Below, one piece after another: positions 12,772 through 58,202 of a DNA stretch of 64,000 nucleotides; the first letter of the stretch is position 1, and every line of letters begins with the position of its first letter. The notes under the pieces were generated by a model. The model had not been told where the DNA came from and made no database searches. It worked only from the letters and a program-made list of their open reading frames with translations. The DNA lies in the IMG/VR virus record IMGVR_UViG_3300028920_000022, positions 394,730 to 458,729 of that record. One strand, 5' to 3'. The position numbers and the translations under genes were made by a program.

Positions 12772-13370
12772 CCAACGTTCAAGCATATCTGCCTAATGAC
12801 TCCGAAATCAATGACATAATAGAATTGTGTGATTTGGAGCCGGTTGGAGATTCTTGGCGTTTGTGGACCGATAATGGCGGCTATACGCTTATTATTAAAA
12901 ACGACAAAAATGTTATTGCTAAAAAAGATAACCCTACAGATAGACAGAATATTAAAATAAAAGATATTCACTTCAAGTCTACCGCAAAACAAATTTCAAA
13001 TAATAGCAAATGGGCAATGCTGTCTGTTGCTAAAAATACAGAAGATCCCAATGTAAATATGTGTTATATTTGGTTTTTGGGAAAAGATAACAAGTTGAGA
13101 TTATTATGTTTTTTAAGAAATGAATGGGTCGAGAATCAAATGCCACTCAGTTCAGGTATTGGTTCTTTGAGAACTGTGGTACAAAATATCGAAATTGACG
13201 ATTATAAAGTAATTTCAGGATCTCGATATATAAAAGGTACGTACTCAGGAAATGTGCTAAAATCCTGGGCAACTAGGTGGCCACCCTCAAACCGTGTGAC
13301 GTTAGATATGCTGTTGACAAATAGGACGCTTTTGCATAGAATCCTGACTGACTGTGGGGTACTCTCCTAA
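12750..13370 (+). CDS. Hypothetical protein
   Basis: ORF in operon. Confidence 0.6.
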   Translation: MDRSKALTNVQAYLPNDSEINDIIELCDLEPVGDSWRLWTDNGGYTLIIKNDKNVIAKKDNPTDRQNIKIKDIHFKSTAKQISNNSKWAMLSVAKNTEDPNVNMCYIWFLGKDNKLRLLCFLRNEWVENQMPLSSGIGSLRTVVQNIEIDDYKVISGSRYIKGTYSGNVLKSWATRWPPSNRVTLDMLLTNRTLLHRILTDCGVLS

Positions 13371-13597
13371 TGGCTGGCGACAAGATGGAATTCGTAGGGG
13401 TGGTAGAAAAAGCCCTGGGAAATGGCAACTTTCGGGTCAATGCCGAAGGTGTGTCCGTACCATTAAAATGTACGCTATCTGGTAAAATTCGTAAAAATAC
13501 AATTCGAATTATCGAAGGTGATAGCGTTAGAATAGAAGTTTCTCCATATGATATTTCTCGTGGAGTAATAGTTTACCGACTGAAATCGAAAGGTTGA
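13370..13597 (+). CDS. infA: Translation initiation factor IF-1
   Basis: GVVEKALGNGNFRV...SGKIRKNTIRIIEGDSVRIEVSPYDISRGVIVYR. Confidence 0.95.
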   Translation: MAGDKMEFVGVVEKALGNGNFRVNAEGVSVPLKCTLSGKIRKNTIRIIEGDSVRIEVSPYDISRGVIVYRLKSKG

Positions 13598-14079
13598 TCA
13601 TGGAATATAATAATCCATTCATGTTAGGCAAAATTAAAGAGGTAAAAGGTTGTGCATCTTTACCTCACACTTCAGATAGCCGCACTATTATAACAATAAA
13701 CAATATGTCCGGCGAATATGAAAGTGTCGCTGGAAACGTTCCTATAGCAAAAGTATATCCCAGAGCCAAGGATGAATATCGTAAATGGTGGAGAAACCAA
13801 CAGGGATTTAAGTTGGGAGAAATTTTAACCACCCAGGTTCAAAGTGATACAGAAATTGCAAACGTCTTAATTTGTGTCACAGATGAAGACGGTGACGATA
13901 GCTTAGAAGAAACAGCAGTAAAAGCTGCATTAAATAAATTAGGACAACATTGTTCTTATAATAAGCTAAACGCACATATCAACAAGTTGCCAAACGATGA
14001 TGCATGGAAAATTGTTGAAGACGGACTCAAAGAATACTTGGTAAAACGTGGAGTAAATGTAACCGTATATTCGGAGTGA
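13594..14079 (+). CDS. Degenerate macrodomain (Poa1p/TARG1-like), probably catalytically dead
   Basis: IKEVKG..., YRKWW...FKLG...QV..D..IAN, VNVTVY match the fold; G-x-G and IGxGLAGG loops absent. Confidence 0.6.
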   Translation: MIMEYNNPFMLGKIKEVKGCASLPHTSDSRTIITINNMSGEYESVAGNVPIAKVYPRAKDEYRKWWRNQQGFKLGEILTTQVQSDTEIANVLICVTDEDGDDSLEETAVKAALNKLGQHCSYNKLNAHINKLPNDDAWKIVEDGLKEYLVKRGVNVTVYSE

Positions 14080-14084
14080 TTTAG

Positions 14085-14453
14085 ATGCTATCTGAAATTC
14101 GTACCATGACCGGTGTTTATTCCGGTTCAATTAAGCCGCAATCTGGAATGGCGGTTTCTGTTGGTGTTGTTAGCCACAAGATGCACTTTATACCGAAAGA
14201 CAAAGCGCATCCTTTGGTGGGATACGTTGACAGAACGTGGTCAAATGGTAAGGAAATTTGGATAGTGGTGGTGTTAGCTTATCATACGTTTGTAACCACC
14301 GCTTATGATAAAAAAGCAAAATACCCACTAAACGCTAATTTGTTTATCAACGATGAGTGTTTGTTGACAACCGCTCGTCCAAGTGAAGATTCTGAGCCAT
14401 ATGGTGTGGTTATTAATTACGACAGTGGCGATCTAACATTTGTGCAAACATGA
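14085..14453 (+). CDS. Hypothetical beta-rich protein
   Basis: ORF in operon. Confidence 0.6.
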   Translation: MLSEIRTMTGVYSGSIKPQSGMAVSVGVVSHKMHFIPKDKAHPLVGYVDRTWSNGKEIWIVVVLAYHTFVTTAYDKKAKYPLNANLFINDECLLTTARPSEDSEPYGVVINYDSGDLTFVQT

Positions 14454-14481
14454 CTCAATTAAGAAGTTTTAGTGAGGATCC

Positions 14482-14991
14482 GTGATCTATTGCATTCTCA
14501 CTACTGGCGGATATGTTGAGTCTGCCCAGATAGCCACAATTATGTGGTGTACGGATCCTAGTTTGGTTATTCCGGCTCAGGCTGAAACAGCCGAAGATGC
14601 CTTAAAAAGCCTTGCAAACGATCTTCTAATGGAATATTTGGAAGAATGGATGAGAGATCATTTTGAGCCGGAAGAGTTTAGTGCCTGGGTTTATGACTTG
14701 GTTAAGATGGATTCTTGTAACGATGGTTTTCGTAGGTATGGAAAAGCAGCTGCTCCGGGACCGGACCATTGGTGGCCATATGTAAATTTGTCGACTTTTA
14801 GATCTTTTGATGTTGACCAAATATTGAATATACCTGAGAATTTTGAGATACTAGCAACGATGGCAATAGACCCATTACTTATCAAGGACAAAGAGGGAAG
14901 AAAACATCTTATTCAATATCAAAAAGAATATGACGTAACCTATAAACAGGACGAGGACGGATATTGGGTGGCGGAGTTGGAGTATAAATAA
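14482..14991 (+). CDS. Hypothetical protein
   Basis: GAGGA SD before GTG. Confidence 0.6.
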   Translation: MIYCILTTGGYVESAQIATIMWCTDPSLVIPAQAETAEDALKSLANDLLMEYLEEWMRDHFEPEEFSAWVYDLVKMDSCNDGFRRYGKAAAPGPDHWWPYVNLSTFRSFDVDQILNIPENFEILATMAIDPLLIKDKEGRKHLIQYQKEYDVTYKQDEDGYWVAELEYK

Positions 14992-15305
14992 TGTCAGGCA
15001 ACAAATTTGTACGCAAAATTTATGTGGATATTTGCAGAAATGATCCGGTAGATATCAGGTGTGGTGGTGCTCCGGTTTTGGGTTTTGACTATACTGTAGA
15101 CGCAGCATTACACAAAGAAGCGCTGAAAACCATTAAAGAAGAATTAGAACGCCAAGGTGTTAAGCCTATGGGAATACACTCTACTGGTAGGTATAAAGTT
15201 TTGGCTAGCAAAAAAACTTGGACTTTGTTGGGAATTAAACGCAATATAAGAAAAGAGTTCAAAGATTGGCTTTTAAGCGAATATAAAAGAGGCTCTTATG
15301 TTTGA
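14991..15305 (+). CDS. Hypothetical protein
   Basis: TAATG coupling. Confidence 0.6.
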   Translation: MSGNKFVRKIYVDICRNDPVDIRCGGAPVLGFDYTVDAALHKEALKTIKEELERQGVKPMGIHSTGRYKVLASKKTWTLLGIKRNIRKEFKDWLLSEYKRGSYV

Positions 15306-15543
15306 TTGGCTAAAACGTTTGCGCCATAAACACAAATGGGTAGCCACTCATCCAGGAATTCGGTGTGAGTTTTGTGATTTAGATTTATCTAAATCTTTGT
15401 TTCCCACTGGTCCGCATGGAATGGATACGCAAATTACCAATTATCATATTGAAAAAGGTTTATTTACACACAGGGTACGGTTTGGGATTTTTATTGTAAA
15501 TTACATGTTTCCCAAATGTCCCGGAAAAAAAGAAAAACTATGA
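15298..15543 (+). CDS. Hypothetical protein with CxxC
   Basis: GAGG SD; overlap coupling. Confidence 0.55.
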   Translation: MFDWLKRLRHKHKWVATHPGIRCEFCDLDLSKSLFPTGPHGMDTQITNYHIEKGLFTHRVRFGIFIVNYMFPKCPGKKEKL

Positions 15544-15836
15544 GCACCCAGGGTATTGACGCATATACTATAGGTTGTGCTGAAAGTTATAGCCAAGGTT
15601 TGTGTCAAGAAAAAACTTTACGCAAATTGGGTAGAACTGATAATTATGATGGTGGCGCAGTTTTTAGGAGCAAAGAAAGTGCCCAGAAATTCATTGACGA
15701 CAACAACTACAAATGGTATGCTGTTTTTGGACTAACGCTTCCAAATGGTTGGGAAACAGATGTAGACGAATCTAAAGAAAAAGAAGAGGGTTTTTGTCGT
15801 CTGCTGAATAATGCTAAAATTGTGAGTTTAAAATGA
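15540..15836 (+). CDS. Hypothetical phage protein
   Basis: ATGA overlap at 15540. Confidence 0.6.
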   Translation: MSTQGIDAYTIGCAESYSQGLCQEKTLRKLGRTDNYDGGAVFRSKESAQKFIDDNNYKWYAVFGLTLPNGWETDVDESKEKEEGFCRLLNNAKIVSLK

Positions 15837-16282
15837 TAGTCAAACTAGGAATGGGACCAACCTCTATATTGCTTGATCAGTATCCGGAACAGCTAGTGGT
15901 TTCCATCTGTATCCGAGCCGACTGGGAACGTGAAGAAAAGGTCGGAGATGCTACGGACTGTGGAGAAGAGGGCATCTGGTATCGAGATCCTGACTTCTCC
16001 GAGGCGGGCAGTACAATCATTAAGCTAAAGCCTTTCCTGACAGAAGACGATCAGCATTTCTACGACATACAACTTCCGTCCTTGGCTAAGCTGCATACTC
16101 TTAGCCAACACCGTTTTTTGGTCAAGTACTGGGATATGGACGTGTACCTTCCGGCGCTTAGGACTGCGAGGTTTTCAGTAGTAGAAGGTGTTGATGAAGA
16201 TAACCAATCTTTTTGGGAACTTAGAGAGATCGGTATAACACTGACGGGATTTTCTTTGCAAACGAAGAACGCTGCGGAGTAA
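15833..16282 (+). CDS. Hypothetical protein
   Basis: ATGA overlap. Confidence 0.6.
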   Translation: MIVKLGMGPTSILLDQYPEQLVVSICIRADWEREEKVGDATDCGEEGIWYRDPDFSEAGSTIIKLKPFLTEDDQHFYDIQLPSLAKLHTLSQHRFLVKYWDMDVYLPALRTARFSVVEGVDEDNQSFWELREIGITLTGFSLQTKNAAE

Positions 16283-16394
16283 AATTGACTCAAACACTTT
16301 TGATCTGTCTTTTCTGTGGGTTGCACAACTACTGTGTGGATAACCCAGGATGTACAATAGTTGGCGAAACTGACGAATTAAGCGAGGACGAATA

Positions 16395-17072
16395 ATGACT
16401 AAAATAGAACTAGCTCAAACTATAGAACATACCATATTGAAAGCTGGCGCTACAGAAAGAGAAGTGCGCAAGGTTCTCAATGAGGTAGAAGAGTTTGGTT
16501 TTTGGGGCGCCTGTGTAAACCCTATTTATGTAAAATTAGCTAGAAAAGTACTATCAGAACATTTTCATGTTATTACTGTGGTGAATTTCCCACTCGGAGC
16601 GTCTACTCTTTTTTCAGTTTGTGAGGATATGGCAAAAGCCTTTGATCATGGGGCTGACGAAATAGATATTGTAGCGCCACTTAATTTAGCTAAAGAACAT
16701 AAATGGGATGCGCTTGGTGGATTTTTTGATTTAATACGAGATAAATTTATATTATCTAATAACTTAAAAGTTATTTTAGAAACAGGATTATTCACTCACA
16801 ACGAACTATATGATTTAGTGGATGCTGTTTCTCCCATAGGTTTTTTAAAAACTTCTACAGGTTTTGGTCCAAGAGGAGCGTCGGTCACTGACATACAGTT
16901 TTTGTCAAATGTACTGAAAAGAAGAGAAAACTACACAAATACTAAAATTAAAGCATCTGGTGGTATAAAGAACACCGAACAAGCCATTTCAATGATAGAA
17001 GCCGGAGCTTCTAGAATTGGAACATCTAGCGGAGTAGAGATTATTCGAGGTTTAGATGACAAAAATACTTAA
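16395..17072 (+). CDS. deoC: Deoxyribose-phosphate aldolase
   Basis: TVVNFPLG, GADEIDIV, LKVILET, FLKTSTGF, IKASGGI, GASRIGTS. Confidence 0.95.
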   Translation: MTKIELAQTIEHTILKAGATEREVRKVLNEVEEFGFWGACVNPIYVKLARKVLSEHFHVITVVNFPLGASTLFSVCEDMAKAFDHGADEIDIVAPLNLAKEHKWDALGGFFDLIRDKFILSNNLKVILETGLFTHNELYDLVDAVSPIGFLKTSTGFGPRGASVTDIQFLSNVLKRRENYTNTKIKASGGIKNTEQAISMIEAGASRIGTSSGVEIIRGLDDKNT

Positions 17073-17286
17073 AAACATGGCGCAATGCAAACTGTGTGGT
17101 GATATAATAGAATCTACACATGTGTACGATTTTAAGTTTTGCAAATGTGGCGCTATTTTTGTAGATGGTGGTAAAGAATATTTGCGTCGAGGTGGTAAAG
17201 ATTTGAACTTAATTATAGAATTGAGCGTTAAAGAAGGTGAAAACAATATCATAACCGTAGGAGAACACAAATGTCTGATTCAGTAG
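17056..17286 (+). CDS. Small phage zinc-binding protein
   Basis: CKLCGDIIES.HVYDFKFCKCGAIFVDGG.EYLRR. Confidence 0.65.
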   Translation: MTKILKNMAQCKLCGDIIESTHVYDFKFCKCGAIFVDGGKEYLRRGGKDLNLIIELSVKEGENNIITVGEHKCLIQ

Positions 17287-17943
17287 TAATAGAAATTAGA
17301 GCTGCCGAAGGTGGCAAAGATGCACAACTTCTAGTAGAAGATCAGCTTAGGGCTTATACCAAAGCTGCGGAGCGGGAGTGTCTTTGACGCTACTCTGTTA
17401 GAACATAGACAGGCATTTGTTTCTGTATTATTTGAGGGAAAAGGGGCAAATAATTTATTCAAAAATGAGGCGGGAGGACATCGGTTTCAACGAGTCTCTC
17501 CCACCGAAAAACGAGGGCGTGTCCATACCTCTACCATTACCGTAGCAGTATTGGACGCCGATACCAAGCCTCAGTTCGAGCTTGACGAACGTGATGTAGA
17601 AATCATTACATCACGTGGCAGCGGACCGGGCGGTCAACACAGAAATATGACAGATAGCTGTGTTGTAGCTAAACACATACCAACTGGTATATCTGCTAAG
17701 ATCGATTATAGATCTCAGTCACAAAGTAAACAGCTGGCGCTCAAAATTCTTGCCTCTCGTGTGGAGAATATACAGCAAGAACAATGGGCAAATGACCGAG
17801 ATAAAAAGAGGAAACGACAGGTGGGTCGTGGACAACGTGGAGATAAGCGGAGAACGTATCGGGAACGGGACGATCAAATTGTTGATCATGTAACCGGCAA
17901 GAAATGGAAGTTTAGTCGTTGGATGCGAGGGATTTGGTCCTAA
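17271..17943 (+). CDS. Short class-I peptide chain release factor (223 aa, lacks domain 1) made by +1 programmed frameshift
   Basis: AGGAG SD + ATG 17271; frame 0 IEIRAAEGG..A (38 codons) to CTT TGA C; +1 frame gives EAGGHRFQRVSPTEKRGRVHTS, GPGGQHRN, RTY motifs. Confidence 0.9.
17374..17388 (+). promoter_or_regulatory. RF2-type +1 frameshift cassette
   Basis: GGGAG-TGT-CTT-TGA-C matches the prfB pattern (internal SD, 3 nt, CUU UGA C). Confidence 0.88.
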
Positions 17944-20782: not shown

Positions 20783-20819
20783 TGTATTCTCCTTACTTTA
20801 GAAGAATACTGTACTATTG

Positions 20820-30341: not shown

Positions 30342-30345
30342 CAGG

Positions 30346-30420
30346 TCCCCCAGATAGGATTCGAACCTATATTATTCACAGATTAGAAATCTGGTGCCAT
30401 GTCCATTAGGCGACTGGGGG
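30346..30420 (-). tRNA. tRNA-Arg(TCT)
   Basis: CCCCCAG/CTGGGGG acceptor, CAGA-TTTCTAA-TCTG anticodon arm, ATAGG-TTCGAAT-CCTAT T-arm. Confidence 0.92.
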
Positions 30421-32857: not shown

Positions 32858-34081
32858 CAAAAAAGAAGTCCTCTACTTTTAAGTGGAGGATGAATTTTTT
32901 CTTCCGTATCTACGCATAATTATTCATATTTTTGAAGATATGTTGGTTTACAAATACAGACTCTATCCCAGTAAAAAGCAGCAAGAAAAACTGTGGATAC
33001 ATGCGAATAAATTGAATTGGATCTATAACCAGTTTCTAGATCAGAAAATTAACACATATAAGAATACAAAAAAGAATCTCTCCAGATACGATCTACAAGC
33101 GCAATTACCGAAACTTAAACAACGAGATCCAGTAATTAAAGAAATACATTCGCAAGTTTTGCAACAGGTGCCCAAGCGTTTAAACCAAGCATTTAAAGAT
33201 TTTTACAAAAGAGGAAACAAAGGATTTCCAAACTTCAGATCTAGTTTGAACTTCTTCGGTATTTGTTATCCTCAGAGCGGATACTCTATATCAGGAAATG
33301 TCTTTAGAACGAAAATATACGGTAAAATGTCGTTTCTCAAATATCGCCCTATTCGTGGGAATATTCGACAAGTGTATATTACTAGTGAGAAAAATGGCTG
33401 GTTCATTTGTATAACAACTGACTATGAAAAAGATATTCCGAAAGCAACGGATAAGATCGGTATTGATGTAGGATTAAAGGATTTGGTTGTAACATCCGAA
33501 GGAAAACATATTAAAAACTGTAGTCATGCGAAATATTTTGACAAACAGATAGCGAAGATATCGTCAAGAATAGATAAGAAAAAGAATAAGAAATCCAGAT
33601 CTCGAAAGTTTCTGTGTAAAGTTCGGCGCAGATTGTATGATGTGAAAAAACGTAAGATTAACGATTTTCAACATAAAGTCTCGAAGAGACTTAGTTCCGA
33701 ATGCGATACAATATTTGCTGAGAATTTGAGTGTAAAGAAGATGAGTGAAGGAGAATTGCGGAACTTAAACAAGAGCATTCGAAATGCCAAATTAGCTAAT
33801 TTCATTTCGTATCTATCATACAAGACCAACACATTGGTGTTGGTCAATCCGAAGAACACAAGCAAGACATGTAATCATTGTGGGAATATTCGAGAGAATT
33901 TGAAGTTATCCGAGAGGACGATTACATGTGACAAATGTGGTGAAGTATATGATAGGGACGAAAATGCCGCTAAGAACGTTTATTGCCTGGGACAGGCTAT
34001 TCAGGATCTACAGTTAGAACCTGAGTATGCTGAATTATTTACGATTCAGGAAGCTCTTGCCTTAAGGCAAGAGTAGTTCAC
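32858..34081 (+). mobile_element. IS200/IS605-family (IS1341-like, tnpB-only) element, 1224 bp
   Basis: LE CAAAAAAG + hairpin TCCTCTAC-TTTTAA-GTGGAGGA; RE hairpin CTCTTGCCT-TA-AGGCAAGAG then TAGTTCAC; removing it restores the flanking reading frame. Confidence 0.85.
32940..34076 (+). CDS. tnpB: TnpB RNA-guided endonuclease
   Basis: YKYRLYP HTH; RuvC IGIDVG / AENL / DRDENAAKN (D-E-D intact); CxxC..CxxC ribbon. Confidence 0.95.
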   Translation: MLVYKYRLYPSKKQQEKLWIHANKLNWIYNQFLDQKINTYKNTKKNLSRYDLQAQLPKLKQRDPVIKEIHSQVLQQVPKRLNQAFKDFYKRGNKGFPNFRSSLNFFGICYPQSGYSISGNVFRTKIYGKMSFLKYRPIRGNIRQVYITSEKNGWFICITTDYEKDIPKATDKIGIDVGLKDLVVTSEGKHIKNCSHAKYFDKQIAKISSRIDKKKNKKSRSRKFLCKVRRRLYDVKKRKINDFQHKVSKRLSSECDTIFAENLSVKKMSEGELRNLNKSIRNAKLANFISYLSYKTNTLVLVNPKNTSKTCNHCGNIRENLKLSERTITCDKCGEVYDRDENAAKNVYCLGQAIQDLQLEPEYAELFTIQEALALRQE

Positions 34082-43474: not shown

Positions 43475-43476
43475 TG

Positions 43477-43549
43477 AGCACCTGGAGGGAATCGAACCCT
43501 CAGCTGGACCTTGGAAGGGTCCCATGTTAGTCCATTACACCACAGATGC
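43477..43549 (-). tRNA. tRNA-Gly(TCC)
   Basis: GCATCTG/CAGGTGC acceptor, GGACC-CTTCCAA-GGTCC, GAGGG-TTCGATT-CCCTC. Confidence 0.95.
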
Positions 43550-46510: not shown

Positions 46511-46512
46511 CT

Positions 46513-48782: not shown

Positions 48783-48810
48783 ATTTGGCAAACTATTCTG
48801 GTTGGAAACT

Positions 48811-50898: not shown

Positions 50899-50912
50899 AT
50901 ACGAATGCGGAA

Positions 50913-51215: not shown

Positions 51216-51304
51216 TAAATCACCACTAGTATTACCAATATAGTAAAAAACGCTCCTACCAAAAAATCAAACCTATTCCCATATAACCAACCTGTTTTTT
51301 TCAT
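51215..51304 (-). CDS. Small membrane peptide (29 aa; not in track)
   Basis: MKKTGWLYGNRFDFLVGAFFTILVILVVI*; ATGA and TAATG coupling at both ends. Confidence 0.5.
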   Translation of the reverse strand: MKKTGWLYGNRFDFLVGAFFTILVILVVI

Positions 51305-51672: not shown

Positions 51673-51862
51673 CGTTTAAAATTTCTGTTACTTCATTGTT
51701 GGTTACTTTTACATTGATTCTGGTAGGAGAATTTTCGTTTTGTGTCACAAATTTCAAACCATCTTTCTCTACAATACGAAAAGAAAAACCAAGTTCTCGA
51801 ACCAGTTTTGATGCCTCTGTAGGTGTAAGACCGATAATATCTTCTAGAATTTCGTGTTCCAT
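51665..51862 (-). CDS. Small phage protein
   Basis: IIGLT..EA...V...G..FRIV..DG....T......RINV.V pattern. Confidence 0.6.
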   Translation of the reverse strand: MEHEILEDIIGLTPTEASKLVRELGFSFRIVEKDGLKFVTQNENSPTRINVKVTNNEVTEILNVG

Positions 51863-51944
51863 TTTATCTTTCCTATGTGTTGAAATGTGGTTGTGACGCG
51901 CTAGTAATGTTCTACTAAAACGTGGTATAAATGCTCATATTAAT

Positions 51945-53336
51945 ATGCGCATATTTTTCTATCTAACGTTAATTTTTGTAATTTTGTTTTCTGTCAATTG
52001 TGGCAGCAGTTCAGAAAGTTCTCCAAATAAGGAAAACCATGCAACAGGTGGTAGCCAAATAAACGCTGCTGGTAGTGGTGGAGAAGGGGCAATAATGTCT
52101 GGAGCCAGCGGTATATACTCAAATATTAGTAATGGCGGGCAAAGCGGAAGTCAAATTATAGCTTCTGGTGGGGCTGCAGGAATTATTGAAATTACTGGCG
52201 GAAGTTCTACTAGTGATGGTCCCGGTTTAGGAGGGGGAACAACTAGTGATCCTGGTCCTAGCGTTGGTGGGGGCAGCACTCAGGATCCTGGTGGGGTAGG
52301 TGGCGGAACTACCGAAGATCCTGGTTCAGGCGGAGGAAACACTGATGATCCTGGCTCAGGTGGAGGATCTACGGTTGATCCTGGAGTTGGCGGAGGAAAT
52401 ACTGATGACCCAGGAACAGGTGGGGCTACCGCAGATCCCGGCTCAGGTGGAACAACAAGCCCAGGTTTGGGCGGAGCTACAGAAGACCCAGGTACTGGCG
52501 GAACCAATGACCCAGGTACCGGCGGAGCTACAGCAGATGGTGGTACTGGCGGGTACTCTCCTCCTGATGAAGATTGTCCATGGGTGTGTGTTCCTGCGGC
52601 AATTGAAGGTACAAATCTTATTGTTCTCAACGATGCGGCTCCAAGTGGTGCTGACGTAGAAGGTAGAATGTATGTCGGTAATAATGCTGTTTTACCTAGT
52701 GGCTATGCGGTAAATGCAGTAGAAACTATTGTGGGAGCTAATGAATATGCTTTAGTGGTTGGCAATGACCTTACTGTCAATGGCGGTACAGTTCATGGTG
52801 CTATCGCTTTTGGTGGCGAAATGAGCGGATCTATAACCGCAACAGGTGGAATTGTAAATGCTAGCCCAGTAGATTTTGAACAGCTTAGCAATGATATGTT
52901 GTACTGGAGCGATACTCTTGCCGAAACACCAGATAACGGAACGGTAAGCGGATCTTTGGTTTTGACTGGTACCGATTTAGAGGTCAATGTATTTACTGTA
53001 GATGCGTCAGCGTTGGCGGCAGCTAGTGGCTTATCAATTACAGTTCCAGATGATTCTACAGTACTCATTAACGTAACAGGTGCAGAGGTGTCTATCACCA
53101 ACATGGGCTTTAATTATATTGGCACAGATAGCCAACATGTTATGTTTAATATGCCTCAGGCTGAGACTGTCTTTATGAGCGGAATTAGTTTGCAGGGGAC
53201 TTTATTAGCGCCTCGTGCAGATTTGACCTTCGAAAACGGTAACGCTGAGGGACAAGTGATAGTGTATAATCTTGTTACCGGAGGCGGCGAATATCACCCA
53301 TACTACTTCACTGGTTGTCCCTGGGAATGTATATAG
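51945..53336 (+). CDS. Choice-of-anchor A family lipoprotein with Gly-rich repeat stalk
   Basis: Lipobox SVNC; DPGxGGG repeats; NLIVLND...DVEGRMYVG, NVF, TVLINVTG, VMFN, GTLLAPRA, GGEYH. Confidence 0.8.
   Translation: MRIFFYLTLIFVILFSVNCGSSSESSPNKENHATGGSQINAAGSGGEGAIMSGASGIYSNISNGGQSGSQIIASGGAAGIIEITGGSSTSDGPGLGGGTTSDPGPSVGGGSTQDPGGVGGGTTEDPGSGGGNTDDPGSGGGSTVDPGVGGGNTDDPGTGGATADPGSGGTTSPGLGGATEDPGTGGTNDPGTGGATADGGTGGYSPPDEDCPWVCVPAAIEGTNLIVLNDAAPSGADVEGRMYVGNNAVLPSGYAVNAVETIVGANEYALVVGNDLTVNGGTVHGAIAFGGEMSGSITATGGIVNASPVDFEQLSNDMLYWSDTLAETPDNGTVSGSLVLTGTDLEVNVFTVDASALAAASGLSITVPDDSTVLINVTGAEVSITNMGFNYIGTDSQHVMFNMPQAETVFMSGISLQGTLLAPRADLTFENGNAEGQVIVYNLVTGGGEYHPYYFTGCPWECI
52213..52545 (+). 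repeat. About ten Gly-rich D(P)GxGGxT repeat units
   Basis: GATCCTGGT/GACCCAGG-type units spaced ~27-36 bp. Confidence 0.75.
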
Positions 53337-54159
53337 CCGATACCAACTCTTTAACAGCCTTTTGCCATTTAAGTAAATTATACTGTTTTAGTTTTCTAAA
53401 GAACTTGCTAGCAATGAAATCTTCGCTAGGAGCACCTAAACCGACAAACACTTTTATTGCCTTATTTTTATCATAATCAGGATCGAATAGTGATTTGAAT
53501 AGTAGGAACCTATTTAGTTTTTTAGTTTCCTGTAACAGTAACGGATAAAATTCTATGTCTCTTAATGAGTGTGATTGCTGCTCAAAATTAAGGCGCTGTC
53601 CAGTATTGGGGCTTCGTTTATATCCGTATGGGTCCCGAGTTGAGCGCATTTCTCTAGCGGGTAAACCGAAGTTTTTATTTGATAAAAACGTTTGAGTCAT
53701 ATGTACCAACTCATGCTCAACGACCAAACGAATAGTTTGTAACACATTAGGTATAAAGGCAGAATTATTTAAATCTTTTTCGGTTGGTGCTGGAGTTTTT
53801 ATCACCATAGTGTTAGCGATCCCAGACCAAGCACCTCCCCCGGCAGAAGGGGCAATTATAACATTTATGTCTGGAATGTATTCTTTGTTCTCAAACAACG
53901 GGGCATAGCGCCAACCTTCTAGTTTTAGTGGAAAACTGGCATCAGGCATTTCTTCAATTAAATCAATTGGTGTATCTGCTACAACATGGCTTGTTTTTAA
54001 TTGGGATATGTCTTTCCCAGATTGTTGCATCAACCATAAAACATGAGATAGGTACATTTTCTGTACCCATTCGGTAATCTCTTTTTGTGTGGTAGGAGGC
54101 GCTTCTATCATACCTGCGGTAGAGTATAGACGGGCAGTTTTATAAAGAACCTCATACAT
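53308..54159 (-). CDS. Zincin-like metallopeptidase-motif protein
   Basis: VVEHELVHMTQ (HExxH), downstream DIEFY. Confidence 0.6.
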   Translation of the reverse strand: MYEVLYKTARLYSTAGMIEAPPTTQKEITEWVQKMYLSHVLWLMQQSGKDISQLKTSHVVADTPIDLIEEMPDASFPLKLEGWRYAPLFENKEYIPDINVIIAPSAGGGAWSGIANTMVIKTPAPTEKDLNNSAFIPNVLQTIRLVVEHELVHMTQTFLSNKNFGLPAREMRSTRDPYGYKRSPNTGQRLNFEQQSHSLRDIEFYPLLLQETKKLNRFLLFKSLFDPDYDKNKAIKVFVGLGAPSEDFIASKFFRKLKQYNLLKWQKAVKELVSAIYIPRDNQ

Positions 54160-54163
54160 CTCT

Positions 54164-54658
54164 CTAAATTGCGGAATTATTGCTATTTAAGTCTGGTTGA
54201 GGAGAAATGCGGTAGATCATCTTGTTTTGTTGATGAGCATATCTCATGCAATTTGCCGTTCCTCCGGGGCTACCATTCCAAACCCCAATAACCGCATCTG
54301 CGTTATCTACCATCCATTCGTTTCTTTTCTGCATTTTCCATGGTTCATACCCGCCCTCCGAAACAATTACTATTTCTGCAGCCAAGGATAATAATTGATA
54401 ATATTTGGACTGAGATTCCTGTGGCCAAATATACTCTTGCCCTTTAAAAGGAATGGCGGCAACCCATGGTATATTCAATTCATTACATATCTCTGCACTC
54501 CAGGTATCGATACCAAGAGCCATGCCCGAAATAGCTTTTTGAGGCTTTACTTCTTTTAAAACCCTTTTAATTTCCTTACAAATATGATCGTAAGTAGGAT
54601 TCGGAATAGTAAAACCACCCACCGATTGAGGACGATGTCCAGTAAAACAGACTATCAT
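54164..54658 (-). CDS. SLOG-family (YspA/DUF1273-like) protein
   Basis: FTGHRP, ISGMALGID, AAIPFKGQ, MQKRNEWMVD, GGTANC. Confidence 0.85.
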   Translation of the reverse strand: MIVCFTGHRPQSVGGFTIPNPTYDHICKEIKRVLKEVKPQKAISGMALGIDTWSAEICNELNIPWVAAIPFKGQEYIWPQESQSKYYQLLSLAAEIVIVSEGGYEPWKMQKRNEWMVDNADAVIGVWNGSPGGTANCMRYAHQQNKMIYRISPQPDLNSNNSAI

Positions 54659-54666
54659 TGTTATCC

Positions 54667-56148
54667 TTAACTAAGAAGATATCGAATTATTCGCTCGATA
54701 ATTCCTTCTTCCTCGACAGGTTTTTCTTCGACAGGTTTTTTGAATTCGTTTGTAGGAGCTTGGGCTACCGGTATCGGTTTTCCTCGCTTGGCTGCATTAT
54801 ACCTGCCCTGTATTGTAGCGGCAATATCGCCCACAGTATAGTAGCCTTTTTTGTTTCTGTCAAATGTCTTATTCCAACCGTACGCTATTGAACCCTCGCG
54901 AGCAGCAACATAATTTGATGGGCGACCCATCAAATTCGGCATAAATACCGCCAAATAAGCATCTTTTACATTATGTATCTTGCCCTTATGAGGCATATAC
55001 CAGCGTTTTACCATATCTAACTGTTTTAATGCACTTTGTGACTTCATCCATTCCGAAGCCATCTTTTTTCCTTGCAAATCTAGTTTGGTTCCCCGTGGTG
55101 GTACTCCATAGTATTTTTGTATATTAGACGGCATCCATTGAATTAAACCGGTAGCATAAGAATATTTATTTACTGCCTTTGGATTAAACCCAGATTCAAG
55201 ACTAATTACTGTAGCTAACATATTAGGATCTATATCTACGTCATTTGCTACTTGAATTAACTTTTGTTTAAACTCAGGAGTGGTTCTCTCTAACCCTCTT
55301 ACAGGAATTAATCCATCAGATCTGTAATTATTGGTTTGGCGTTCTTCTCCGGTAGGATAATGTAAATCTACACCTTTATGCCATTTAGGATTTCTACTGG
55401 TTGGAGGGTGCCAGCTAATTTTTGCTATATATTTTTCACCGCCCAATGTAAAAGCAATCAAAGTTCCTAATGGGCGATCACCAAACCTTTTTAGTATTGC
55501 TACTGCCGCTTTAGAGAGAGCTGGAGTTACCTCGCTGTCCTTCATAGCCCTCATGTTAACATTTGGCGCAGAAGGGCTCTGTTTACCAGTGGTAGCCCAG
55601 CTCCAAATTTCATCTGCCCATTGAGAATATCCCTTGCCGGTTGGGTGAATTTTGTCTACTTTGCTGTGAGGTAAATTAACTTCTCTGCTATCAAAAAAGT
55701 GTTTGGTATTACTCTGTATTGTCCCTAAAATATTTCTTTTGATAGGTACCCCGGCAGATTTATCTGGCAGTGTTGGTGCCCCTATCCATAGAGGAGTGGC
55801 TCCGGATGATTTGATGGTATTTGTTAATTCTTGGGTTAATGAGGCTATTTGTTTGGTGGACATGCCTCCGTAAGCATCATTAGTACCTAGACAAATAAAT
55901 ACGTGGGTTGGTTGAAAGGTTTTTAACTGATGGTTTAACCATTGTCTGCCTTCGCCTTTGGTCCAATACCATACAGTTTTGCTACCTACGCCTTTCCCTT
56001 TATATGGAATGCCTGCGTTTTCTATGCGCTGTTTTAATGGGGCATTTAAGCCCACAGCCAAGGAGTCACCGATCAGTAGGACTTTTTGCTGGGCGGCGAT
56101 TTTGTGGAAGTTGGAACAGGCTTTTTCCAGGGAAGAATAGCGTAACAT
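54667..56148 (-). CDS. SGNH/GDSL hydrolase fused to a lysozyme-like transglycosylase
   Basis: IGDSLA, LGTND, D.IHPTGKGY; VISLESGFNP.AVN, TGLIQWM, Y.AVFMP. Confidence 0.8.
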   Translation of the reverse strand: MLRYSSLEKACSNFHKIAAQQKVLLIGDSLAVGLNAPLKQRIENAGIPYKGKGVGSKTVWYWTKGEGRQWLNHQLKTFQPTHVFICLGTNDAYGGMSTKQIASLTQELTNTIKSSGATPLWIGAPTLPDKSAGVPIKRNILGTIQSNTKHFFDSREVNLPHSKVDKIHPTGKGYSQWADEIWSWATTGKQSPSAPNVNMRAMKDSEVTPALSKAAVAILKRFGDRPLGTLIAFTLGGEKYIAKISWHPPTSRNPKWHKGVDLHYPTGEERQTNNYRSDGLIPVRGLERTTPEFKQKLIQVANDVDIDPNMLATVISLESGFNPKAVNKYSYATGLIQWMPSNIQKYYGVPPRGTKLDLQGKKMASEWMKSQSALKQLDMVKRWYMPHKGKIHNVKDAYLAVFMPNLMGRPSNYVAAREGSIAYGWNKTFDRNKKGYYTVGDIAATIQGRYNAAKRGKPIPVAQAPTNEFKKPVEEKPVEEEGIIERIIRYLLS

Positions 56149-56160
56149 CTCAGAATAATG

Positions 56161-56574
56161 CTATTTTATTACGTCCTCGATGATGAAGTTATTTTTCCAC
56201 CCATTGAACCACTTTTCGGCTTTTCTCATGCATAAAATCATGTCAAGTTCGACATTGGAAATGGCTTGGAGTCGGTTGAACCAGTCTAAAAACAATTCAC
56301 GAAAATCTTCGTTTATCTCTTCTGATTTTGTAACAGTGTAAGTTAATTTTCCAGGAATAATTTCATCACTTTTGCAAAACAAAGCAACCTCTAATTTATG
56401 TGCGTAGTGTTCAGGATTAGGATCATCGTAGTATCTTGTCCCTGATACCACTTCTGGAATTAATCTGTACAGGTGCATGTTTAAAACATAACCCGGGCAA
56501 TATATGGAAAACTCTGACCGATCAGCTTTTTGACCGCCTCTGTTTATGTTGATGGTAGTTATATATGGTTTCAC
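56161..56574 (-). CDS. Hypothetical protein, IKDIIE-like end
   Basis: Ends FIIEDVIK. Confidence 0.55.
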   Translation of the reverse strand: MKPYITTININRGGQKADRSEFSIYCPGYVLNMHLYRLIPEVVSGTRYYDDPNPEHYAHKLEVALFCKSDEIIPGKLTYTVTKSEEINEDFRELFLDWFNRLQAISNVELDMILCMRKAEKWFNGWKNNFIIEDVIK

Positions 56575-56833
56575 TTTTCCTCGGAAAATGTTTGTACCAA
56601 GCGATTACAGCTACAATGGAAAAATTCATCACATAATTAACCATCAGCACAAAGTCAGAAGAATAATTAGCTAGAGTATAGCAAATATAGCAGAACTCTC
56701 CAATCAGCCAAAGCCAAATTGTGAGGGTCGCCATCCCATTAGCATGTCCTTCTTTTATGGCTTTCAGCATCTGCGGAAGCCCAGAGAAGGAAAAGCATAC
56801 CATACCGATAAGCCCAACTACCACTAAATTCAT
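56522..56833 (-). CDS. PQ-loop/SemiSWEET-like membrane protein
   Basis: GLIG..CF....LPQM.K..K.G.A.G; three TM helices. Confidence 0.75.
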   Translation of the reverse strand: MNLVVVGLIGMVCFSFSGLPQMLKAIKEGHANGMATLTIWLWLIGEFCYICYTLANYSSDFVLMVNYVMNFSIVAVIAWYKHFPRKSETIYNYHQHKQRRSKS

Positions 56834-56860
56834 AACGATAAATGGACAAAAATTAGTAGG

Positions 56861-56933
56861 CGGGTCCTGCGAGATTTGAACTCGCGTCTAAAAGCTTTAA
56901 AGGCTTTCGCTCTCGCCGCTGAGCTAAGGACCC
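56861..56933 (-). tRNA. Ochre suppressor tRNA (anticodon TTA), Lys-like body
   Basis: GGGTCCT/AGGACCC acceptor, GCTC/GAGC D-stem, AAAGC-CTTTAAA-GCTTT anticodon arm, GCGAG-TTCAAAT-CTCGC T-arm, G73. Confidence 0.92.
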
Positions 56934-57253
56934 AGAGCCAAATTAAGTTTGCTACATAGCTTCTTAGATTTCCTACCGGGCTCTAAAGCAATTGCTGTAA
57001 TCTCATCATCGAAATCTGGTTCTCTAAATATAGAAAACTTGATTTCCTTTTCTTTCGCCAATCCCATCAATTCCTTTAAACTATTCTCGTTTTCTGTTTC
57101 TAATATAACTAAGTAGTTTGAGGAATTGAACCACAACAAATCTTCCTGCGGATGATCGTTTACGAAAGCTCTCAGTGCATGACAGGATTGTGCTGCCCTA
57201 GCTCCTGGGGAAAGGTCTGTTCTAGTGACAATATACAGTTTGTTTTAAGCCAT
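56924..57253 (-). CDS. Peptidyl-tRNA hydrolase II-like protein with in-frame TAA at codon 3
   Basis: GAGGA SD; ATG GCT TAA AAC AAA CTG TAT ATT...; KLYIVTRTDL.PG..AAQSCHA, YLVIL, FREPD, TAIAL motifs. Confidence 0.82.
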
Positions 57254-57254
57254 G

Positions 57255-57788
57255 TCAATCCTCGTCATCGTAGTCTGATTCTTCCGCAATTTCTTTCCGT
57301 TCTTGAGCACACGCCCTGAAATAACTGGATATCCTTTCTACTATAGTTTCTGGAATGTCTTGTTTACGAAACTTTTCTTTCCACCCTTCGTATGGTGTGT
57401 CGCCAGAAATCCAATGTCTTTCTCCAACAGTAAAACAGGGAGGGTCGCTATATATCCGACCTAAATCTGTTTCAATATATGGCCAAATCTCAAGTGGTGA
57501 GTCATTACAGCAGCCGCAGTTGTGTCTAATTTCGCAATCATTGACTCGGTTATTGAGTGAAGCAGAACAAAACCTTTCAGTTTTCCACCTATTTATATGA
57601 CGGCGCAAATCCGGGTATTTTTCGCTTCTTTTTATAAGCAAGTCTAGTTCTTGTTGTTTTTTCTGGACCTCTTTTTCTAATTCGTCTATTATACCCGGAA
57701 TACTGTCTTTCCAATTTTGGTATTCCCGTTGTTCTTCGGGGGTCATTTTAAAGTAGTCTTTGTCGGTATATTTGCTGTAGTCTTTCAT
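57255..57788 (-). CDS. Hypothetical protein
   Basis: RHNCGCC.DSPLE..PY motif; ATGA-coupled to the upstream gene. Confidence 0.7.
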   Translation of the reverse strand: MKDYSKYTDKDYFKMTPEEQREYQNWKDSIPGIIDELEKEVQKKQQELDLLIKRSEKYPDLRRHINRWKTERFCSASLNNRVNDCEIRHNCGCCNDSPLEIWPYIETDLGRIYSDPPCFTVGERHWISGDTPYEGWKEKFRKQDIPETIVERISSYFRACAQERKEIAEESDYDDED

Positions 57789-58108
57789 GCTGCCTCCTGA
57801 GATATTCTGTTAATTCGTACAAAGAGCCAATCACGAACTTCCTTCCACTCAGGTCCTGAAACAGAAAACTCAATATCAGAGGCTCTGCAAATATATTTTG
57901 CAATATCTAGAGCCAATCCGGTATAAAACGTAGTCCTTCCAGTTGAGCAATGTTTGTCTTCGTTCGTGGTTCGTTCCATAACCTCATAAGGCAAACCACG
58001 CAAAAAACCATATGCCAACAATCTACAGCGTTGTTTCCAACCGCCAGCTTTAGCACCTTCAATCACCCAAAGTCTAAGTTGAGCAATAGCATTTTTTCTT
58101 GTATTCAT
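57785..58108 (-). CDS. Hypothetical phage protein (first gene of the pth operon)
   Basis: AGGAG SD; RCRLLAYGFLRG.PYE..E motif. Confidence 0.7.
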   Translation of the reverse strand: MNTRKNAIAQLRLWVIEGAKAGGWKQRCRLLAYGFLRGLPYEVMERTTNEDKHCSTGRTTFYTGLALDIAKYICRASDIEFSVSGPEWKEVRDWLFVRINRISQEAA

Positions 58109-58124
58109 GTCAATCTCCTAAAAA

Positions 58125-58202
58125 TCAAAAAGTTACAAACAGTTTTTCTGGAAACTTTTGTTTAGGAGGTCCACGAATTTGATTAATTTACGAGTCGTGC
58201 AT
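58125..58202 (-). promoter_or_regulatory. Leader uORF MHDS*INQIRGPPKQKFPEKLFVTF* (ochre + RGPP arrest-like motif) with attenuator-like hairpin
   Basis: Translation of 58202-58125; TAA at 58190-58188; CAAAAGTT...AACTTTTTG pairing followed by a T-rich run and the SD. Confidence 0.65.

What the first reader, a model, noticed from the sequence alone, without database searches (positions are those of the whole stretch)
13370..58202. Dispersed translation-takeover toolkit with two stop-codon sensors
IF-1, a UGA-sensing RF, a UAA-sensing Pth2/suppressor operon and five tRNAs co-occur. Inference: the phage monitors both UGA and UAA termination and supplies its own rescue factors, e.g. against host defences that attack translation factors or tRNAs.
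Basis: inference. Interest (0 to 1): 0.6.

Follow-up and report, generated by a model that had tools for sequence, protein, structure and literature searches.

The report
Two stop-codon-gated translation genes in a jumbo phage
A 459-kb marine-sediment phage carries a release-factor gene readable only through a +1 frameshift at UGA, and a Pth2-like gene readable only if the suppressor tRNA encoded right behind it decodes a UAA at codon 3; both gates recur in many other huge phages and I found no published description of either.

Summary
The core observation holds. IF-1 is at 13370-13597. A release-factor gene (17271-17943) is interrupted by CTT TGA C. A Pth2-like gene (57253-56924, minus strand) reads ATG GCT TAA at its start. 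A tRNA with anticodon UUA (56933-56859) overlaps its 3' end. The tRNA count is wrong: three lie in the stated range, not five.

Both interruptions are conserved recoding devices, not errors.
- **Release factor.** It is RF1-like and lacks domain 1. Seventeen related viral loci keep CTT-stop with a Shine-Dalgarno-like GGAGG 3-4 nt upstream. About 50 more carry an in-frame TGA at the same position instead.
- **Pth2-like gene.** Of 105 distinct loci, 90 begin with ATG, a few codons, then a stop. The suppressor tRNA downstream on the same strand matches that stop: TAG with CUA in 89 loci, TAA with UUA here. One ungated locus pairs an internal TGA with UCA tRNAs.

These phages use the standard code.

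The two gates are separate modules, not one operon. Co-occurrence with IF-1 is partial and confined to one clade of large genomes. The Pth2-like protein has the PTH2 fold but lacks the canonical catalytic lysine, so a rescue role is unproven. Nothing here tests the anti-defence idea.

The parts
13370..13597 (+). IF-1 (infA) homologue, 75 aa, uninterrupted
   Evidence: Pfam PF01176 63.9 bits; TIGR00008 73.1 bits against a 61.15 cut-off. A promoter-like site matching 11 of 12 positions lies at 13314-13342; this is a consensus match only.
17271..17387 (+). RF gene, frame-0 part: 38 codons ending CTT (17382-17384), then the in-frame TGA (17385-17387)
   Evidence: The Pfam PCRF and NCBIfam RF1 alignments run straight across the junction.
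17374..17388 (+). Frameshift cassette: SD-like GGGAG (17374-17378), TGT spacer, CTT TGA C
   Evidence: Read from the sequence. The layout matches E. coli prfB, AGGGGG UAU CUU UGA C (my own knowledge). All 17 related viral frameshift loci keep CTT-stop, and 13 of them (14 of 18 with the window) have GGAG/GAGG 3-4 nt upstream. The GenBank record LR745208.1 carries GGAGGGGT CTT TGA C.
17386..17943 (+). RF gene, +1-frame part: codon-recognition loop QRV-SPT-E, the GGQ domain, stop TAA
   Evidence: The joined protein P0002 has 223 aa. It scores 186 bits on NF001859 RF1 (positions 105-319 of 347), 114 bits on prfB and 92 bits on prfH. Pfam gives PCRF 74 bits and RF-1 79 bits.
57245..57263 (-). Gate of the Pth2-like gene: SD GAGGA (57263-57259), ATG (57253-57251), GCT, TAA (57247-57245)
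   Evidence: The next canonical start codon downstream is TTG at 57139, 35 codons into the domain. Of 105 distinct homologous loci, 90 have ATG, 0-7 further codons (usually 1-2), then a stop at this place.
56924..57244 (-). Divergent Pth2-like domain (106 aa) and its TAG stop
   Evidence: Pfam PTH2 41.9 bits against a 23-bit cut-off. phrog_1866 65 bits. AlphaFold pLDDT 96.4; the best Foldseek matches are archaeal Pth2 and human Bit1 at TM 0.76-0.81. The canonical GK lysine is absent and DAGxT is replaced by REPD.
56859..56933 (-). Ochre suppressor tRNA, anticodon UUA (56900-56898); its 5' end overlaps the last 10 nt of the Pth2-like gene
   Evidence: ARAGORN; Rfam RF00005 71.5 bits. The discriminator base is G, and CCA is not fully encoded.
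57785..58108 (-). 107-aa ORF of unknown function; members of its family lie upstream of the Pth2-like gene in 22 loci
   Evidence: BLAST clustering of neighbouring ORFs. No Pfam or PHROG match.
30344..30420 (-). tRNA-Arg(TCT)
   Evidence: 56.3 bits.
43476..43549 (-). tRNA-Gly(TCC)
   Evidence: 58.1 bits.

Best explanation
The window holds two separate translational switches, each built on a stop codon. It does not hold one integrated toolkit.

(1) Release factor. This is an RF1-like factor without domain 1. The full protein is made only when a ribosome paused at CUU-UGA-C slips +1, helped by an SD-like GGGAG 3 nt upstream. The need for the frameshift and its conservation are shown. The regulatory logic is inferred: because the factor's codon-reading loop is RF1-like, the yield should rise when termination at UGA, the job of host RF2, is slow. 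That could form an indirect feedback loop, since extra RF1-type activity at UAA would free RF2 for UGA.

(2) Pth2-like gene. Translation starts at an SD-preceded ATG and meets UAA at codon 3. It continues only if the ochre suppressor tRNA decodes that UAA. The tRNA overlaps the gene's 3' end on the same strand, so it is very probably on the same transcript. The protein is therefore made only when, and in proportion as, the phage suppressor is active. The dependence is strongly supported by covariation. The purpose is inferred. The protein may limit or clean up after suppression by acting on suppressor or peptidyl-tRNA, or the gate may simply delay its synthesis.

IF-1 and the ordinary tRNAs are the usual cargo of huge phages.
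For: RF:
- Family alignments cross the shift site.
- The CTT-stop cassette is kept in 17 other viral loci at 41-59% protein identity: TGA in 15, TAA in 1, TAG in 1. The SD-like motif is present in 14 of 18 loci counting the window.
- About 50 further loci carry an in-frame GGY TGA at the same spot, where RF1 has a conserved aromatic residue. Their loci use the standard code.
- So bypass of UGA has been selected in two different forms.

Pth2-like gene:
- Of 105 distinct loci, 90 are gated: 89 with TAG and the window with TAA. The leader is ATG plus 1-2 codons in 76.
- Among loci with at least 2 kb of downstream sequence, 47 of 56 gated loci have the cognate suppressor tRNA on the same strand, against 4 of 13 ungated loci (p = 3e-4). 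No gated locus has only a non-cognate suppressor. Twenty-two suppressor tRNAs lie within 100 nt of the gene's stop.
- Locus L054 has an internal TGA and two tRNA(UCA) genes downstream. L022 has two TAGs and a tRNA(CUA).
- The closest relative (68% identity) reads ATG ACG TAG and has tRNA(CUA) 26 nt downstream.

Genetic code and sequence quality:
- The window's genome is standard code. Coding coverage is 0.893 and does not rise if any stop is read as sense.
- Two TAG-gated complete relatives are also standard code, with TAG ending only 4-6% of genes.
- The sequence is confirmed by separate assemblies.
Against: - There are no expression data. No RNA run holds the region.
- TAA/UUA and TGA/UCA are each seen in a single locus, so the three-way covariation rests on n = 1 for two of its arms. 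The metagenome scan found no more.
- The Fisher test ignores shared ancestry.
- TAA ends 38% of this phage's genes. An efficient ochre suppressor would therefore extend many of its own proteins. I found no enrichment of back-up stops after TAA.
- In Bxz1 and Myrna a GTG start follows the TAG directly. There the gene may be made without suppression.
- The RF reads UAA/UAG by motif, so a UGA gate does not give the simple self-regulation known for prfB. Its SPT tripeptide is unique among the loci examined and its specificity is unknown.
Confidence: 0.72

Rival explanations
1. The interruptions are pseudogene lesions or assembly errors, and neither gene is expressed.
For: Each is a single in-frame stop or a 1-nt frame break, as decay or error would produce. 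There are no RNA data.
Against: The same break at the same place, with the same flanking motif, recurs in dozens of independent contigs at 40-68% protein identity. Domains on both sides are conserved. A second assembly and a second study reproduce the gate.
Confidence: 0.02
2. The phage, or its relatives, use a reassigned genetic code (TAA or TAG read as sense genome-wide). The Pth2-like gene would then be just one of many recoded genes, as in the code-15 phages described in the Borges et al. preprint.
For: Suppressor tRNAs are the hallmark of recoded phages. Lak phages, which are TAG-recoded, also carry this Pth2-like family.
Against: - Coding coverage of the 459-kb genome is 0.893 under table 11 and 0.894 with TAA as sense. 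TAA ends 231 of 600 genes.
- A genome scan for other ATG-few codons-stop-long ORF cases gave no second convincing candidate.
- 200 kb sampled from each of two TAG-gated relatives shows no gain with TAG as sense. The 51 viral loci show none either.
- The stop sits at a fixed position, codons 2-5.
Confidence: 0.04
3. The ATG-X-stop is a minimal upstream ORF, like a start-stop element or the lambda bar minigenes. The Pth2-like protein would be made by re-initiation at a nearby non-canonical start, and the suppressor tRNA would be linked only because the protein acts on tRNAs.
For: - In Bxz1 and Myrna the stop is followed directly by GTG at a proper SD distance.
- In many loci the codon after the stop encodes Ile or Val.
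- Ungated family members also sit inside tRNA arrays.
- Two- and three-codon minigenes are known to provoke peptidyl-tRNA drop-off, the substrate of Pth enzymes (my own knowledge of lambda bar minigenes).
Against: - In the window and its closest relative the codon after the stop is AAC or AAT, and no near-cognate start is in a good position.
- The stop identity tracks the linked anticodon. Under this model the stop could be any of the three, yet it is TAG in 89 of 90 gated loci, with CUA tRNAs beside them.
- Internal gates (L022, L054) cannot be explained by re-initiation.
Confidence: 0.12
4. The phage RF recognises UGA itself, perhaps all three stops through its SPT tripeptide. The frameshift would then be a true prfB-style self-regulating loop.
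For: - The gate codon is TGA in nearly all of about 68 loci. For prfB, the rule is that the gate matches the factor's own specificity; TAG is never used there.
- The window's tripeptide combines the Ser of RF2's SPF with the Thr of RF1's PxT. By the tripeptide-anticodon model of Ito et al. 2000, which I recall but did not check here, that combination would relax both purine positions.
Against: All other loci with a readable motif have PPT (or PPN) within an RF1-type 'QRVPxTE' loop, yet they use TGA. HMM scores favour RF1 over RF2, 186 against 114 bits.
Confidence: 0.25
5. One reading: IF-1, RF, Pth2 and the tRNAs form one co-selected takeover and rescue kit aimed at host defences that damage translation factors or tRNAs.
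For: - The trio recurs in 6 of 16 complete genomes that carry the Pth2-like gene, all 369-481 kb.
- IF-1 and the RF stay within about 4-11 kb of each other in those genomes.
- Phage tRNAs are known to offset host anticodon nucleases (my own knowledge).
Against: - The parts lie on opposite strands about 40 kb apart.
- The type of RF differs between relatives: full-length RF2 in the two checked, against the truncated RF1-like factor here.
- Only 4 of 10 complete genomes with the truncated RF carry the Pth2-like gene.
- Co-occurrence tracks one clade and genome size.
- No defence-related evidence was found.
Confidence: 0.1

Closest known systems
prfB (RF2) programmed +1 ribosomal frameshift
   Same: The cassette is the same: an SD-like element 3 nt upstream, CUU in the P site, UGA in the A site, C at +4, and a +1 slip into the frame that encodes the rest of a class-I release factor.
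   Different: The host protein is RF1-like and lacks domain 1. The site lies in domain 2, at the position of RF1's 'RRW|RVE', not at codon 26 of domain 1. The factor probably does not read UGA. A 2025 survey of 12,753 bacterial genomes reported programmed frameshifting for prfB but found none for prfA (PMC12421855). A sister group uses in-frame UGA readthrough at the same spot.
Stop-codon recoding in phages (code 15 / code 4; suppressor tRNA plus RF 'code-change modules', Borges et al. preprint 10.1101/2021.08.26.457843)
   Same: A phage suppressor tRNA licenses translation of genes that carry in-frame stops. An RF that does not compete with the suppressor accompanies it. The TAG-gated relatives carry full-length RF2.
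   Different: These genomes use the standard code. I found only one convincingly gated gene in this genome. The stop sits at codons 2-5, the gated gene is physically linked to the tRNA, and the gated product is itself a tRNA-related protein. Neither the preprint nor the other papers searched mention Pth2 or frameshifting.
PrfH (RFH), the bacterial release-factor homologue without domain 1
   Same: A class-I RF of about 200-225 aa without domain 1 and with GGQ.
   Different: It scores 91.9 bits against TIGR03072, below the 166.65 cut-off. Its codon-reading loop is RF1-type, not the SxY type. No RtcB partner was seen next to it. PrfH has no recoding site.
Archaeal and eukaryotic peptidyl-tRNA hydrolase 2 (Pth2 / Bit1)
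   Same: Same fold, TM 0.76-0.81. The Pfam score is above threshold, and the 'Q..HA' motif is conserved.
   Different: There is a two-residue deletion, and the Lys that aligns with the catalytic K18 of the Sulfolobus enzyme is missing. DAGxT is replaced by REPD. The genome also carries a more canonical PTH2 copy at G000:19894-20280.
Mimivirus/Megavirus release-factor gene that needs recoding (PMC3521657)
   Same: A viral release-factor gene whose expression needs recoding. This rests on the title, the abstract snippet and my memory; I did not read the paper.
   Different: That gene is a eukaryotic-type eRF1 in a giant virus of amoebae. The family, host and cassette all differ.

Membership tests
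prfB-type programmed +1 frameshift | The ORF is interrupted by an in-frame stop and the rest of the protein is encoded in the +1 frame | tested here: met
   HMM alignments span the junction.
prfB-type programmed +1 frameshift | CUU UGA C slippery/stop motif with an SD-like element about 3 nt upstream | tested here: met
   GGGAG-TGT-CTT-TGA-C at 17374-17388. The motif is conserved in 17 other viral loci.
prfB-type programmed +1 frameshift | The gene product recognises the gate stop codon, giving direct self-regulation | not testable with these tools
   The reading loop is RF1-like (QRV-SPT-E), which argues against UGA recognition, but specificity cannot be computed.
prfB-type programmed +1 frameshift | The site lies near codon 26 in domain 1 of an RF2 orthologue | tested here: not met
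   The protein lacks domain 1 and scores higher as RF1. The site is at codon 38-39, equivalent to roughly residue 140 of RF1.
RF1 (prfA) equivalog | Full-length match above the NCBIfam cut-off, with domains 1-4 | tested here: not met
   186.3 bits against a cut-off of 400. Only profile positions 105-319 of 347 are covered.
RF1 (prfA) equivalog | GGQ catalytic motif and PxT codon-recognition tripeptide | tested here: inconclusive
   GGQ is present. The tripeptide is SPT in the window and PPT in the relatives.
PrfH | Match to TIGR03072 above its cut-off | tested here: not met
   91.9 bits against 166.65.
PTH2 (PF01981) | Pfam gathering threshold and the PTH2 fold | tested here: met
   41.9 bits against 23. 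pLDDT 96.4; Foldseek probability 1.0 and TM 0.76-0.81 to 2zv3, 1q7s and 1xty.
PTH2 (PF01981) | Catalytic Lys of the GK motif and Asp of the DAG motif. The residue roles come from my recollection of work on Sulfolobus Pth2. | tested here: not met
   The Lys position holds A, Y, S or Q after a 2-residue deletion. Asp is replaced by an invariant Glu in REPD.
Nonsense-suppressor tRNA | Canonical cloverleaf with an anticodon complementary to a stop codon | tested here: met
   ARAGORN gives anticodon tta; Rfam tRNA 71.5 bits.
Nonsense-suppressor tRNA | The tRNA is charged and decodes UAA in vivo | not testable with these tools
   Only indirect support: gate and anticodon covary. The discriminator G73 would fit Gln or Glu identity, which is inference.
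Stop-codon-reassigned phage (code 15 or code 4 type) | Many genes carry in-frame copies of the reassigned stop, and coding density rises under the alternative code | tested here: not met
IF-1 (infA) | TIGR00008 equivalog cut-off | tested here: met
   73.1 bits against 61.15.

The most novel reading that the evidence does not exclude
Many huge phages may carry a self-limiting suppression circuit. A suppressor tRNA and a Pth2-fold enzyme would share one transcript. The enzyme could be made only through that tRNA's decoding of a stop at codons 2-5, and it would then deacylate or otherwise inactivate the suppressor or its peptidyl form. That would hold read-through at a set level in a standard-code genome. 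Alongside it, an RF1-type factor gated by a convergently evolved prfB-like cassette would read host RF2 capacity. Together these would be a phage-encoded control layer over termination, distinct from genome-wide recoding.
Probability: 0.25. Interest if true: 0.85.

Novelty: new variant of a known kind. Interest (0 to 1): 0.72.

Why it matters
Programmed frameshifting in release-factor genes has been regarded as particular to prfB. A conserved, apparently independently evolved copy of that cassette in RF1-like phage factors shows the device is portable. A sister form uses UGA readthrough at the same residue. The two together give a natural experiment on what a UGA gate senses.

The gated Pth2-like gene is a minimal natural switch: one tRNA controls one gene. 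It is widespread, with 90 distinct gated loci. A related TAG arrangement occurs in cultivable Cluster C mycobacteriophages such as Bxz1 and Myrna, so the idea can be tested directly at the bench.

It also offers one reason why standard-code phages carry suppressor tRNAs, a question raised but left open in genome reports such as that of Atu_ph07. Such compact, tRNA-dependent switches could also be useful tools in synthetic biology.

Tried and rejected
- Megablast of 54000-60000 against GenBank phages found no match.
- The genome-contig scan with the RF C-terminal part returned only two short bacterial RF fragments and was uninformative.
- My first two scripts for classifying the RF loci used patterns that were too strict and mis-scored many loci. 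I replaced them.
- The search for other gated genes in the 459-kb genome produced mostly off-frame junk ORFs and no second convincing case.
- A test for back-up stops after TAA-terminated genes showed no enrichment against TGA-terminated genes, 0.32 in both.
- The suppressor tRNAs are too divergent (75% identity or less) to assign an amino-acid identity or show common descent.
- Pfam and PHROG scans of the conserved neighbours gave nothing, apart from a sub-threshold HD-domain hit in the upstream gene of 17 loci. The window's 177-aa ORF in that position shows no similarity to it.
- No RNA-seq run holds the region, so expression and tRNA processing could not be examined.
- The metagenome scan added 60 distinct loci but no further TAA or TGA gates.
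- The promoter and terminator scans were at background level.
- Paper searches found no description of either gate. The library lacks most subscription journals, so this is absence in what was searched, not proof of novelty.
- I did not use the large protein searches, because the family scans and locus scans answered the questions.

Full report
**Origin and context.** The window is the last 64 kb (394730-458729) of a 458,729-bp IMG/VR virus record that CheckV rates 100% complete. The same contig appears in a marine-sediment metagenome. GC content is about 38%. Genes run on the + strand up to about 18 kb and on the minus strand after that. The whole genome has 16 tRNA genes. It uses the standard code. 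Greedy ORF coverage is 0.893 under table 11 and does not rise when TAA, TAG or TGA is read as sense. Gene ends are TGA 274, TAA 231 and TAG 95.

**Checking the observation.**
- IF-1 is real: 13370-13597, TIGR00008 73 bits.
- The RF-1 domain found by a six-frame search belongs to a gene that starts at ATG 17271. Frame 0 reads 38 codons and ends ...GAG TGT CTT TGA C. The +1 frame then continues DATLLE...GGQ... to 17943.
- On the minus strand, an SD (GAGGA) and ATG GCT TAA are followed in frame by a complete PTH2 domain.
- A tRNA with anticodon UUA begins 10 nt before that gene's stop codon.
- Only three tRNAs lie in the stated range. A fourth is called by ARAGORN alone, outside it. 'Five tRNAs' is therefore wrong.
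- A Logan contig from the probable source run matches 55500-58299 with no differences. A 151-nt contig from a different salt-marsh study matches 57122-57272, which includes the gate.

**The release factor.**
- The joined 223-aa protein (P0002) matches RF1 best: 186 bits over profile positions 105-319 of 347. It scores 114 bits on RF2 and 92 on PrfH, all below the family cut-offs. It is therefore an RF1-like factor without domain 1.
- The cassette GGGAG-TGT-CTT-TGA-C has the same layout as the E. coli prfB site. It sits in domain 2, at the position of RF1's 'RRW|RVE'.
- A profile scan of IMG/VR returned 80 related loci. In 17 of them the gene needs a +1 shift at CTT-stop: TGA in 15, TAA in 1, TAG in 1. 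Counting the window, 14 of these 18 loci have GGAG or GAGG 3-4 nt upstream.
- About 50 other loci have no frameshift. They carry an in-frame GGY TGA at the same position. One locus is uninterrupted and has Phe there.
- Both groups of loci use TGA as an ordinary stop and show no sign of recoding.
- The published but unannotated huge-phage record LR745208.1 carries GGAGGGGT CTT TGA C.
- Every relative with a readable motif has an RF1-type loop (QRVPPTE, occasionally PPN). Only the window has SPT.
- A 2025 survey of 12,753 bacterial genomes found programmed frameshifting in prfB and none in prfA. A conserved cassette in an RF1-like gene is therefore new relative to that literature.
- What is shown: a UGA must be bypassed, and selection has kept that requirement in two mechanistic forms. 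What is inferred: the gate reads host RF2 activity. The alternative, that the phage factor itself reads UGA, remains open.

**The Pth2-like gene and its tRNA.**
- After the TAA, the first canonical start is a TTG 35 codons into the domain. It would remove the first strand and two helices of a confidently predicted PTH2 fold (pLDDT 96.4; TM 0.76-0.81 to archaeal Pth2 and Bit1). The full domain therefore needs read-through.
- Scans of viral and metagenome contigs gave 105 distinct homologous loci. Of these, 90 begin with ATG, 0-7 further codons (1-2 in 76 loci), then a stop. The stop is TAG in 89 and TAA only in the window.
- Where at least 2 kb of downstream sequence is held, 47 of 56 gated loci have a tRNA(CUA) on the same strand, against 4 of 13 ungated loci (Fisher 3e-4, not corrected for relatedness). 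No gated locus has only a non-cognate suppressor. Twenty-two suppressor tRNAs lie within 100 nt of the gene's stop.
- One of the ungated loci, L054, has an internal in-frame TGA and two tRNA(UCA) genes downstream. L022 has two in-frame TAGs.
- The closest relative (68% identity) reads ATG ACG TAG and has tRNA(CUA) 26 nt downstream.
- Stop and anticodon therefore covary as TAG/CUA, TAA/UUA and TGA/UCA. The last two pairs are seen once each.
- These are not recoded genomes. The 5-kb loci, and 200 kb sampled from each of two complete TAG-gated genomes, show standard-code density. TAG ends only 4-6% of genes there.
- An anticodon UUA reads UAG as well as UAA by wobble (classical genetics, my own knowledge). 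That gives a neutral path from CUA/TAG to UUA/TAA.

**What the Pth2-like protein is.**
- It belongs to phrog_1866 and passes the Pfam PTH2 threshold.
- Compared with archaeal Pth2 and with the canonical PTH2 copies in these same phages, the subfamily has a two-residue deletion, no Lys at the catalytic GK position, and REPD in place of DAGxT.
- Its activity is therefore open.
- The family is tied to tRNA genes even when ungated. In 206 Cluster C mycobacteriophage records it is annotated 'peptidyl tRNA hydrolase' and, in the two examined, lies inside the tRNA array.
- In Bxz1 the sequence is ATG TAG GTG, with a tRNA(CUA) 306 nt downstream that the record labels 'tRNA-OTHER'. In Myrna it is GTG TAG GTG, with a tRNA(CUA) 130 nt downstream. 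The GTG may serve as the start there, so those may be leaky or relic gates. They offer cultivable test systems.

**Are the parts one toolkit?**
- IF-1 and the RF lie on the + strand 4 kb apart. The Pth2-like gene and its tRNA lie on the minus strand 40 kb away.
- Of 16 complete genomes that carry the Pth2-like gene, 10 have an RF-domain gene, 8 have IF-1, and 6 have all three. Those 6 are all 369-481 kb.
- In the two relatives checked, the RF is a full-length, uninterrupted RF2 (398 and 417 bits). In most of the six it lies 8-11 kb from IF-1. That pairing suits an amber suppressor, because RF2 does not read UAG.
- This phage instead has the truncated RF1-like gene near IF-1. That looks like a non-orthologous replacement.
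- Only 4 of 10 complete genomes with the truncated RF carry the Pth2-like family.
- Co-occurrence is therefore real within one clade of very large phages but is not obligatory, and I had no background rate to compare it with.

**Open problems.**
- TAA ends 38% of this phage's genes, and I saw no extra back-up stops after them. An efficient ochre suppressor should be costly to the phage. That argues for weak or tightly controlled suppression and gives some weight to a feedback role for the gated protein.
- TAA-terminated genes are followed by T in 49% of cases, a strong termination context, whereas the gate TAA is followed by A.
- The stop codon of the Pth2-like gene lies inside the tRNA. RNase P processing would therefore leave that mRNA without a stop. 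This is peculiar to this phage.
- Neither the amino-acid identity of the tRNA nor the specificity of the SPT release factor can be computed.

**Verdict.** The framing as a single anti-defence rescue kit is not supported. I rate this a new variant of known kinds: prfB-type frameshifting, and suppressor-dependent gene expression in phages. I found no description of either gate in the papers I could search.

Noticed in passing
window 1740-3146 (+), 6135-7277 (+), 8305-9321 (+): A 468-aa protein with WGR, PARP regulatory and PARP catalytic domains (107 bits). This is a eukaryote-like PARP in a phage. Nearby are a NAMPT-like gene and an ADP-ribosylglycohydrolase, which together suggest an NAD/ADP-ribosylation cluster.
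   Followed up: no
window 56924-56933 (-): The TAG stop of the Pth2-like gene lies inside the 5' end of the suppressor tRNA. RNase P cleavage would leave that mRNA without a stop codon. Relatives have 6-40 nt or more between the stop and the tRNA.
   Followed up: partly
window 57230-57258 (-): A sigma-70-like site matching 11 of 12 positions (TTGACA-17-TATATT) overlaps the gate. It would start transcripts downstream of the ATG-GCT-TAA. The -10 element is a by-product of the conserved KLYIV codons, and the -35 is absent in the closest relative. Probably chance.
   Followed up: partly
window 54667-56574 (-): The 137-aa ORF (56161-56574) and the 493-aa protein with a GDSL lipase domain and a lytic transglycosylase (SLT) domain (54667-56148) are in one frame, separated by a single TAG. 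An anticodon UUA could also read TAG. With the PQ-loop membrane protein at 56522-56833, this could be a lysis-type cassette just downstream of the suppressor. Same-frame adjacency is expected by chance one time in three.
   Followed up: no
L084-L148 (about 50 viral loci), e.g. L101:2486-3160: A large group of phage RF1-like genes without domain 1 carry an in-frame GGY TGA ACT where RF1 has a conserved Trp or Phe. The loci use the standard code. Read-through by tRNA-Trp would restore the native residue.
   Followed up: partly
L167 (Mycobacterium phage Bxz1, NC_004687.1 94750-95510); L168 (Myrna): Cluster C mycobacteriophages have NTG TAG GTG at the start of their 'peptidyl tRNA hydrolase' gene and a tRNA with anticodon CUA just downstream. 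The Bxz1 record labels that tRNA 'tRNA-OTHER'.
   Followed up: partly
G005, G021 (L013, L149) compared with window 17271-17943: Large relatives with TAG gates carry a full-length uninterrupted RF2 about 8-11 kb from IF-1. This phage has the truncated frameshifted RF1-like gene in the corresponding neighbourhood, an apparent non-orthologous replacement.
   Followed up: partly
window 32883-34076 (+); 51945-53336 (+): A TnpB/IS605 OrfB gene and a 463-aa pAdhesive_15 protein (165 bits; local GC 0.446) both sit on the + strand inside the minus-strand block. They look like insertions.
   Followed up: no
G000:C1:19894-20280 (-), outside the window: The genome has a second, more canonical and ungated PTH2 gene (54 bits, with GK and DAG motifs). 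G005 shows the same pairing.
   Followed up: partly
whole genome G000: Stop-codon use varies along the genome. TGA dominates in 0-150 kb and TAA in 200-300 kb. TAA is followed by T in 49% of genes.
   Followed up: no
window 17056-17286 (+): A DUF7695 zinc-ribbon-like ORF (91 bits) ends 16 nt into the RF gene. I did not check whether this pairing is conserved.
   Followed up: no
L021:1918-2490 and 16 other loci: A phrog_14850 protein with a sub-threshold HD-domain match lies directly upstream of, and often in frame with, the gated Pth2-like gene. In those loci, read-through of its TAG could in principle make a fusion protein.
   Followed up: partly
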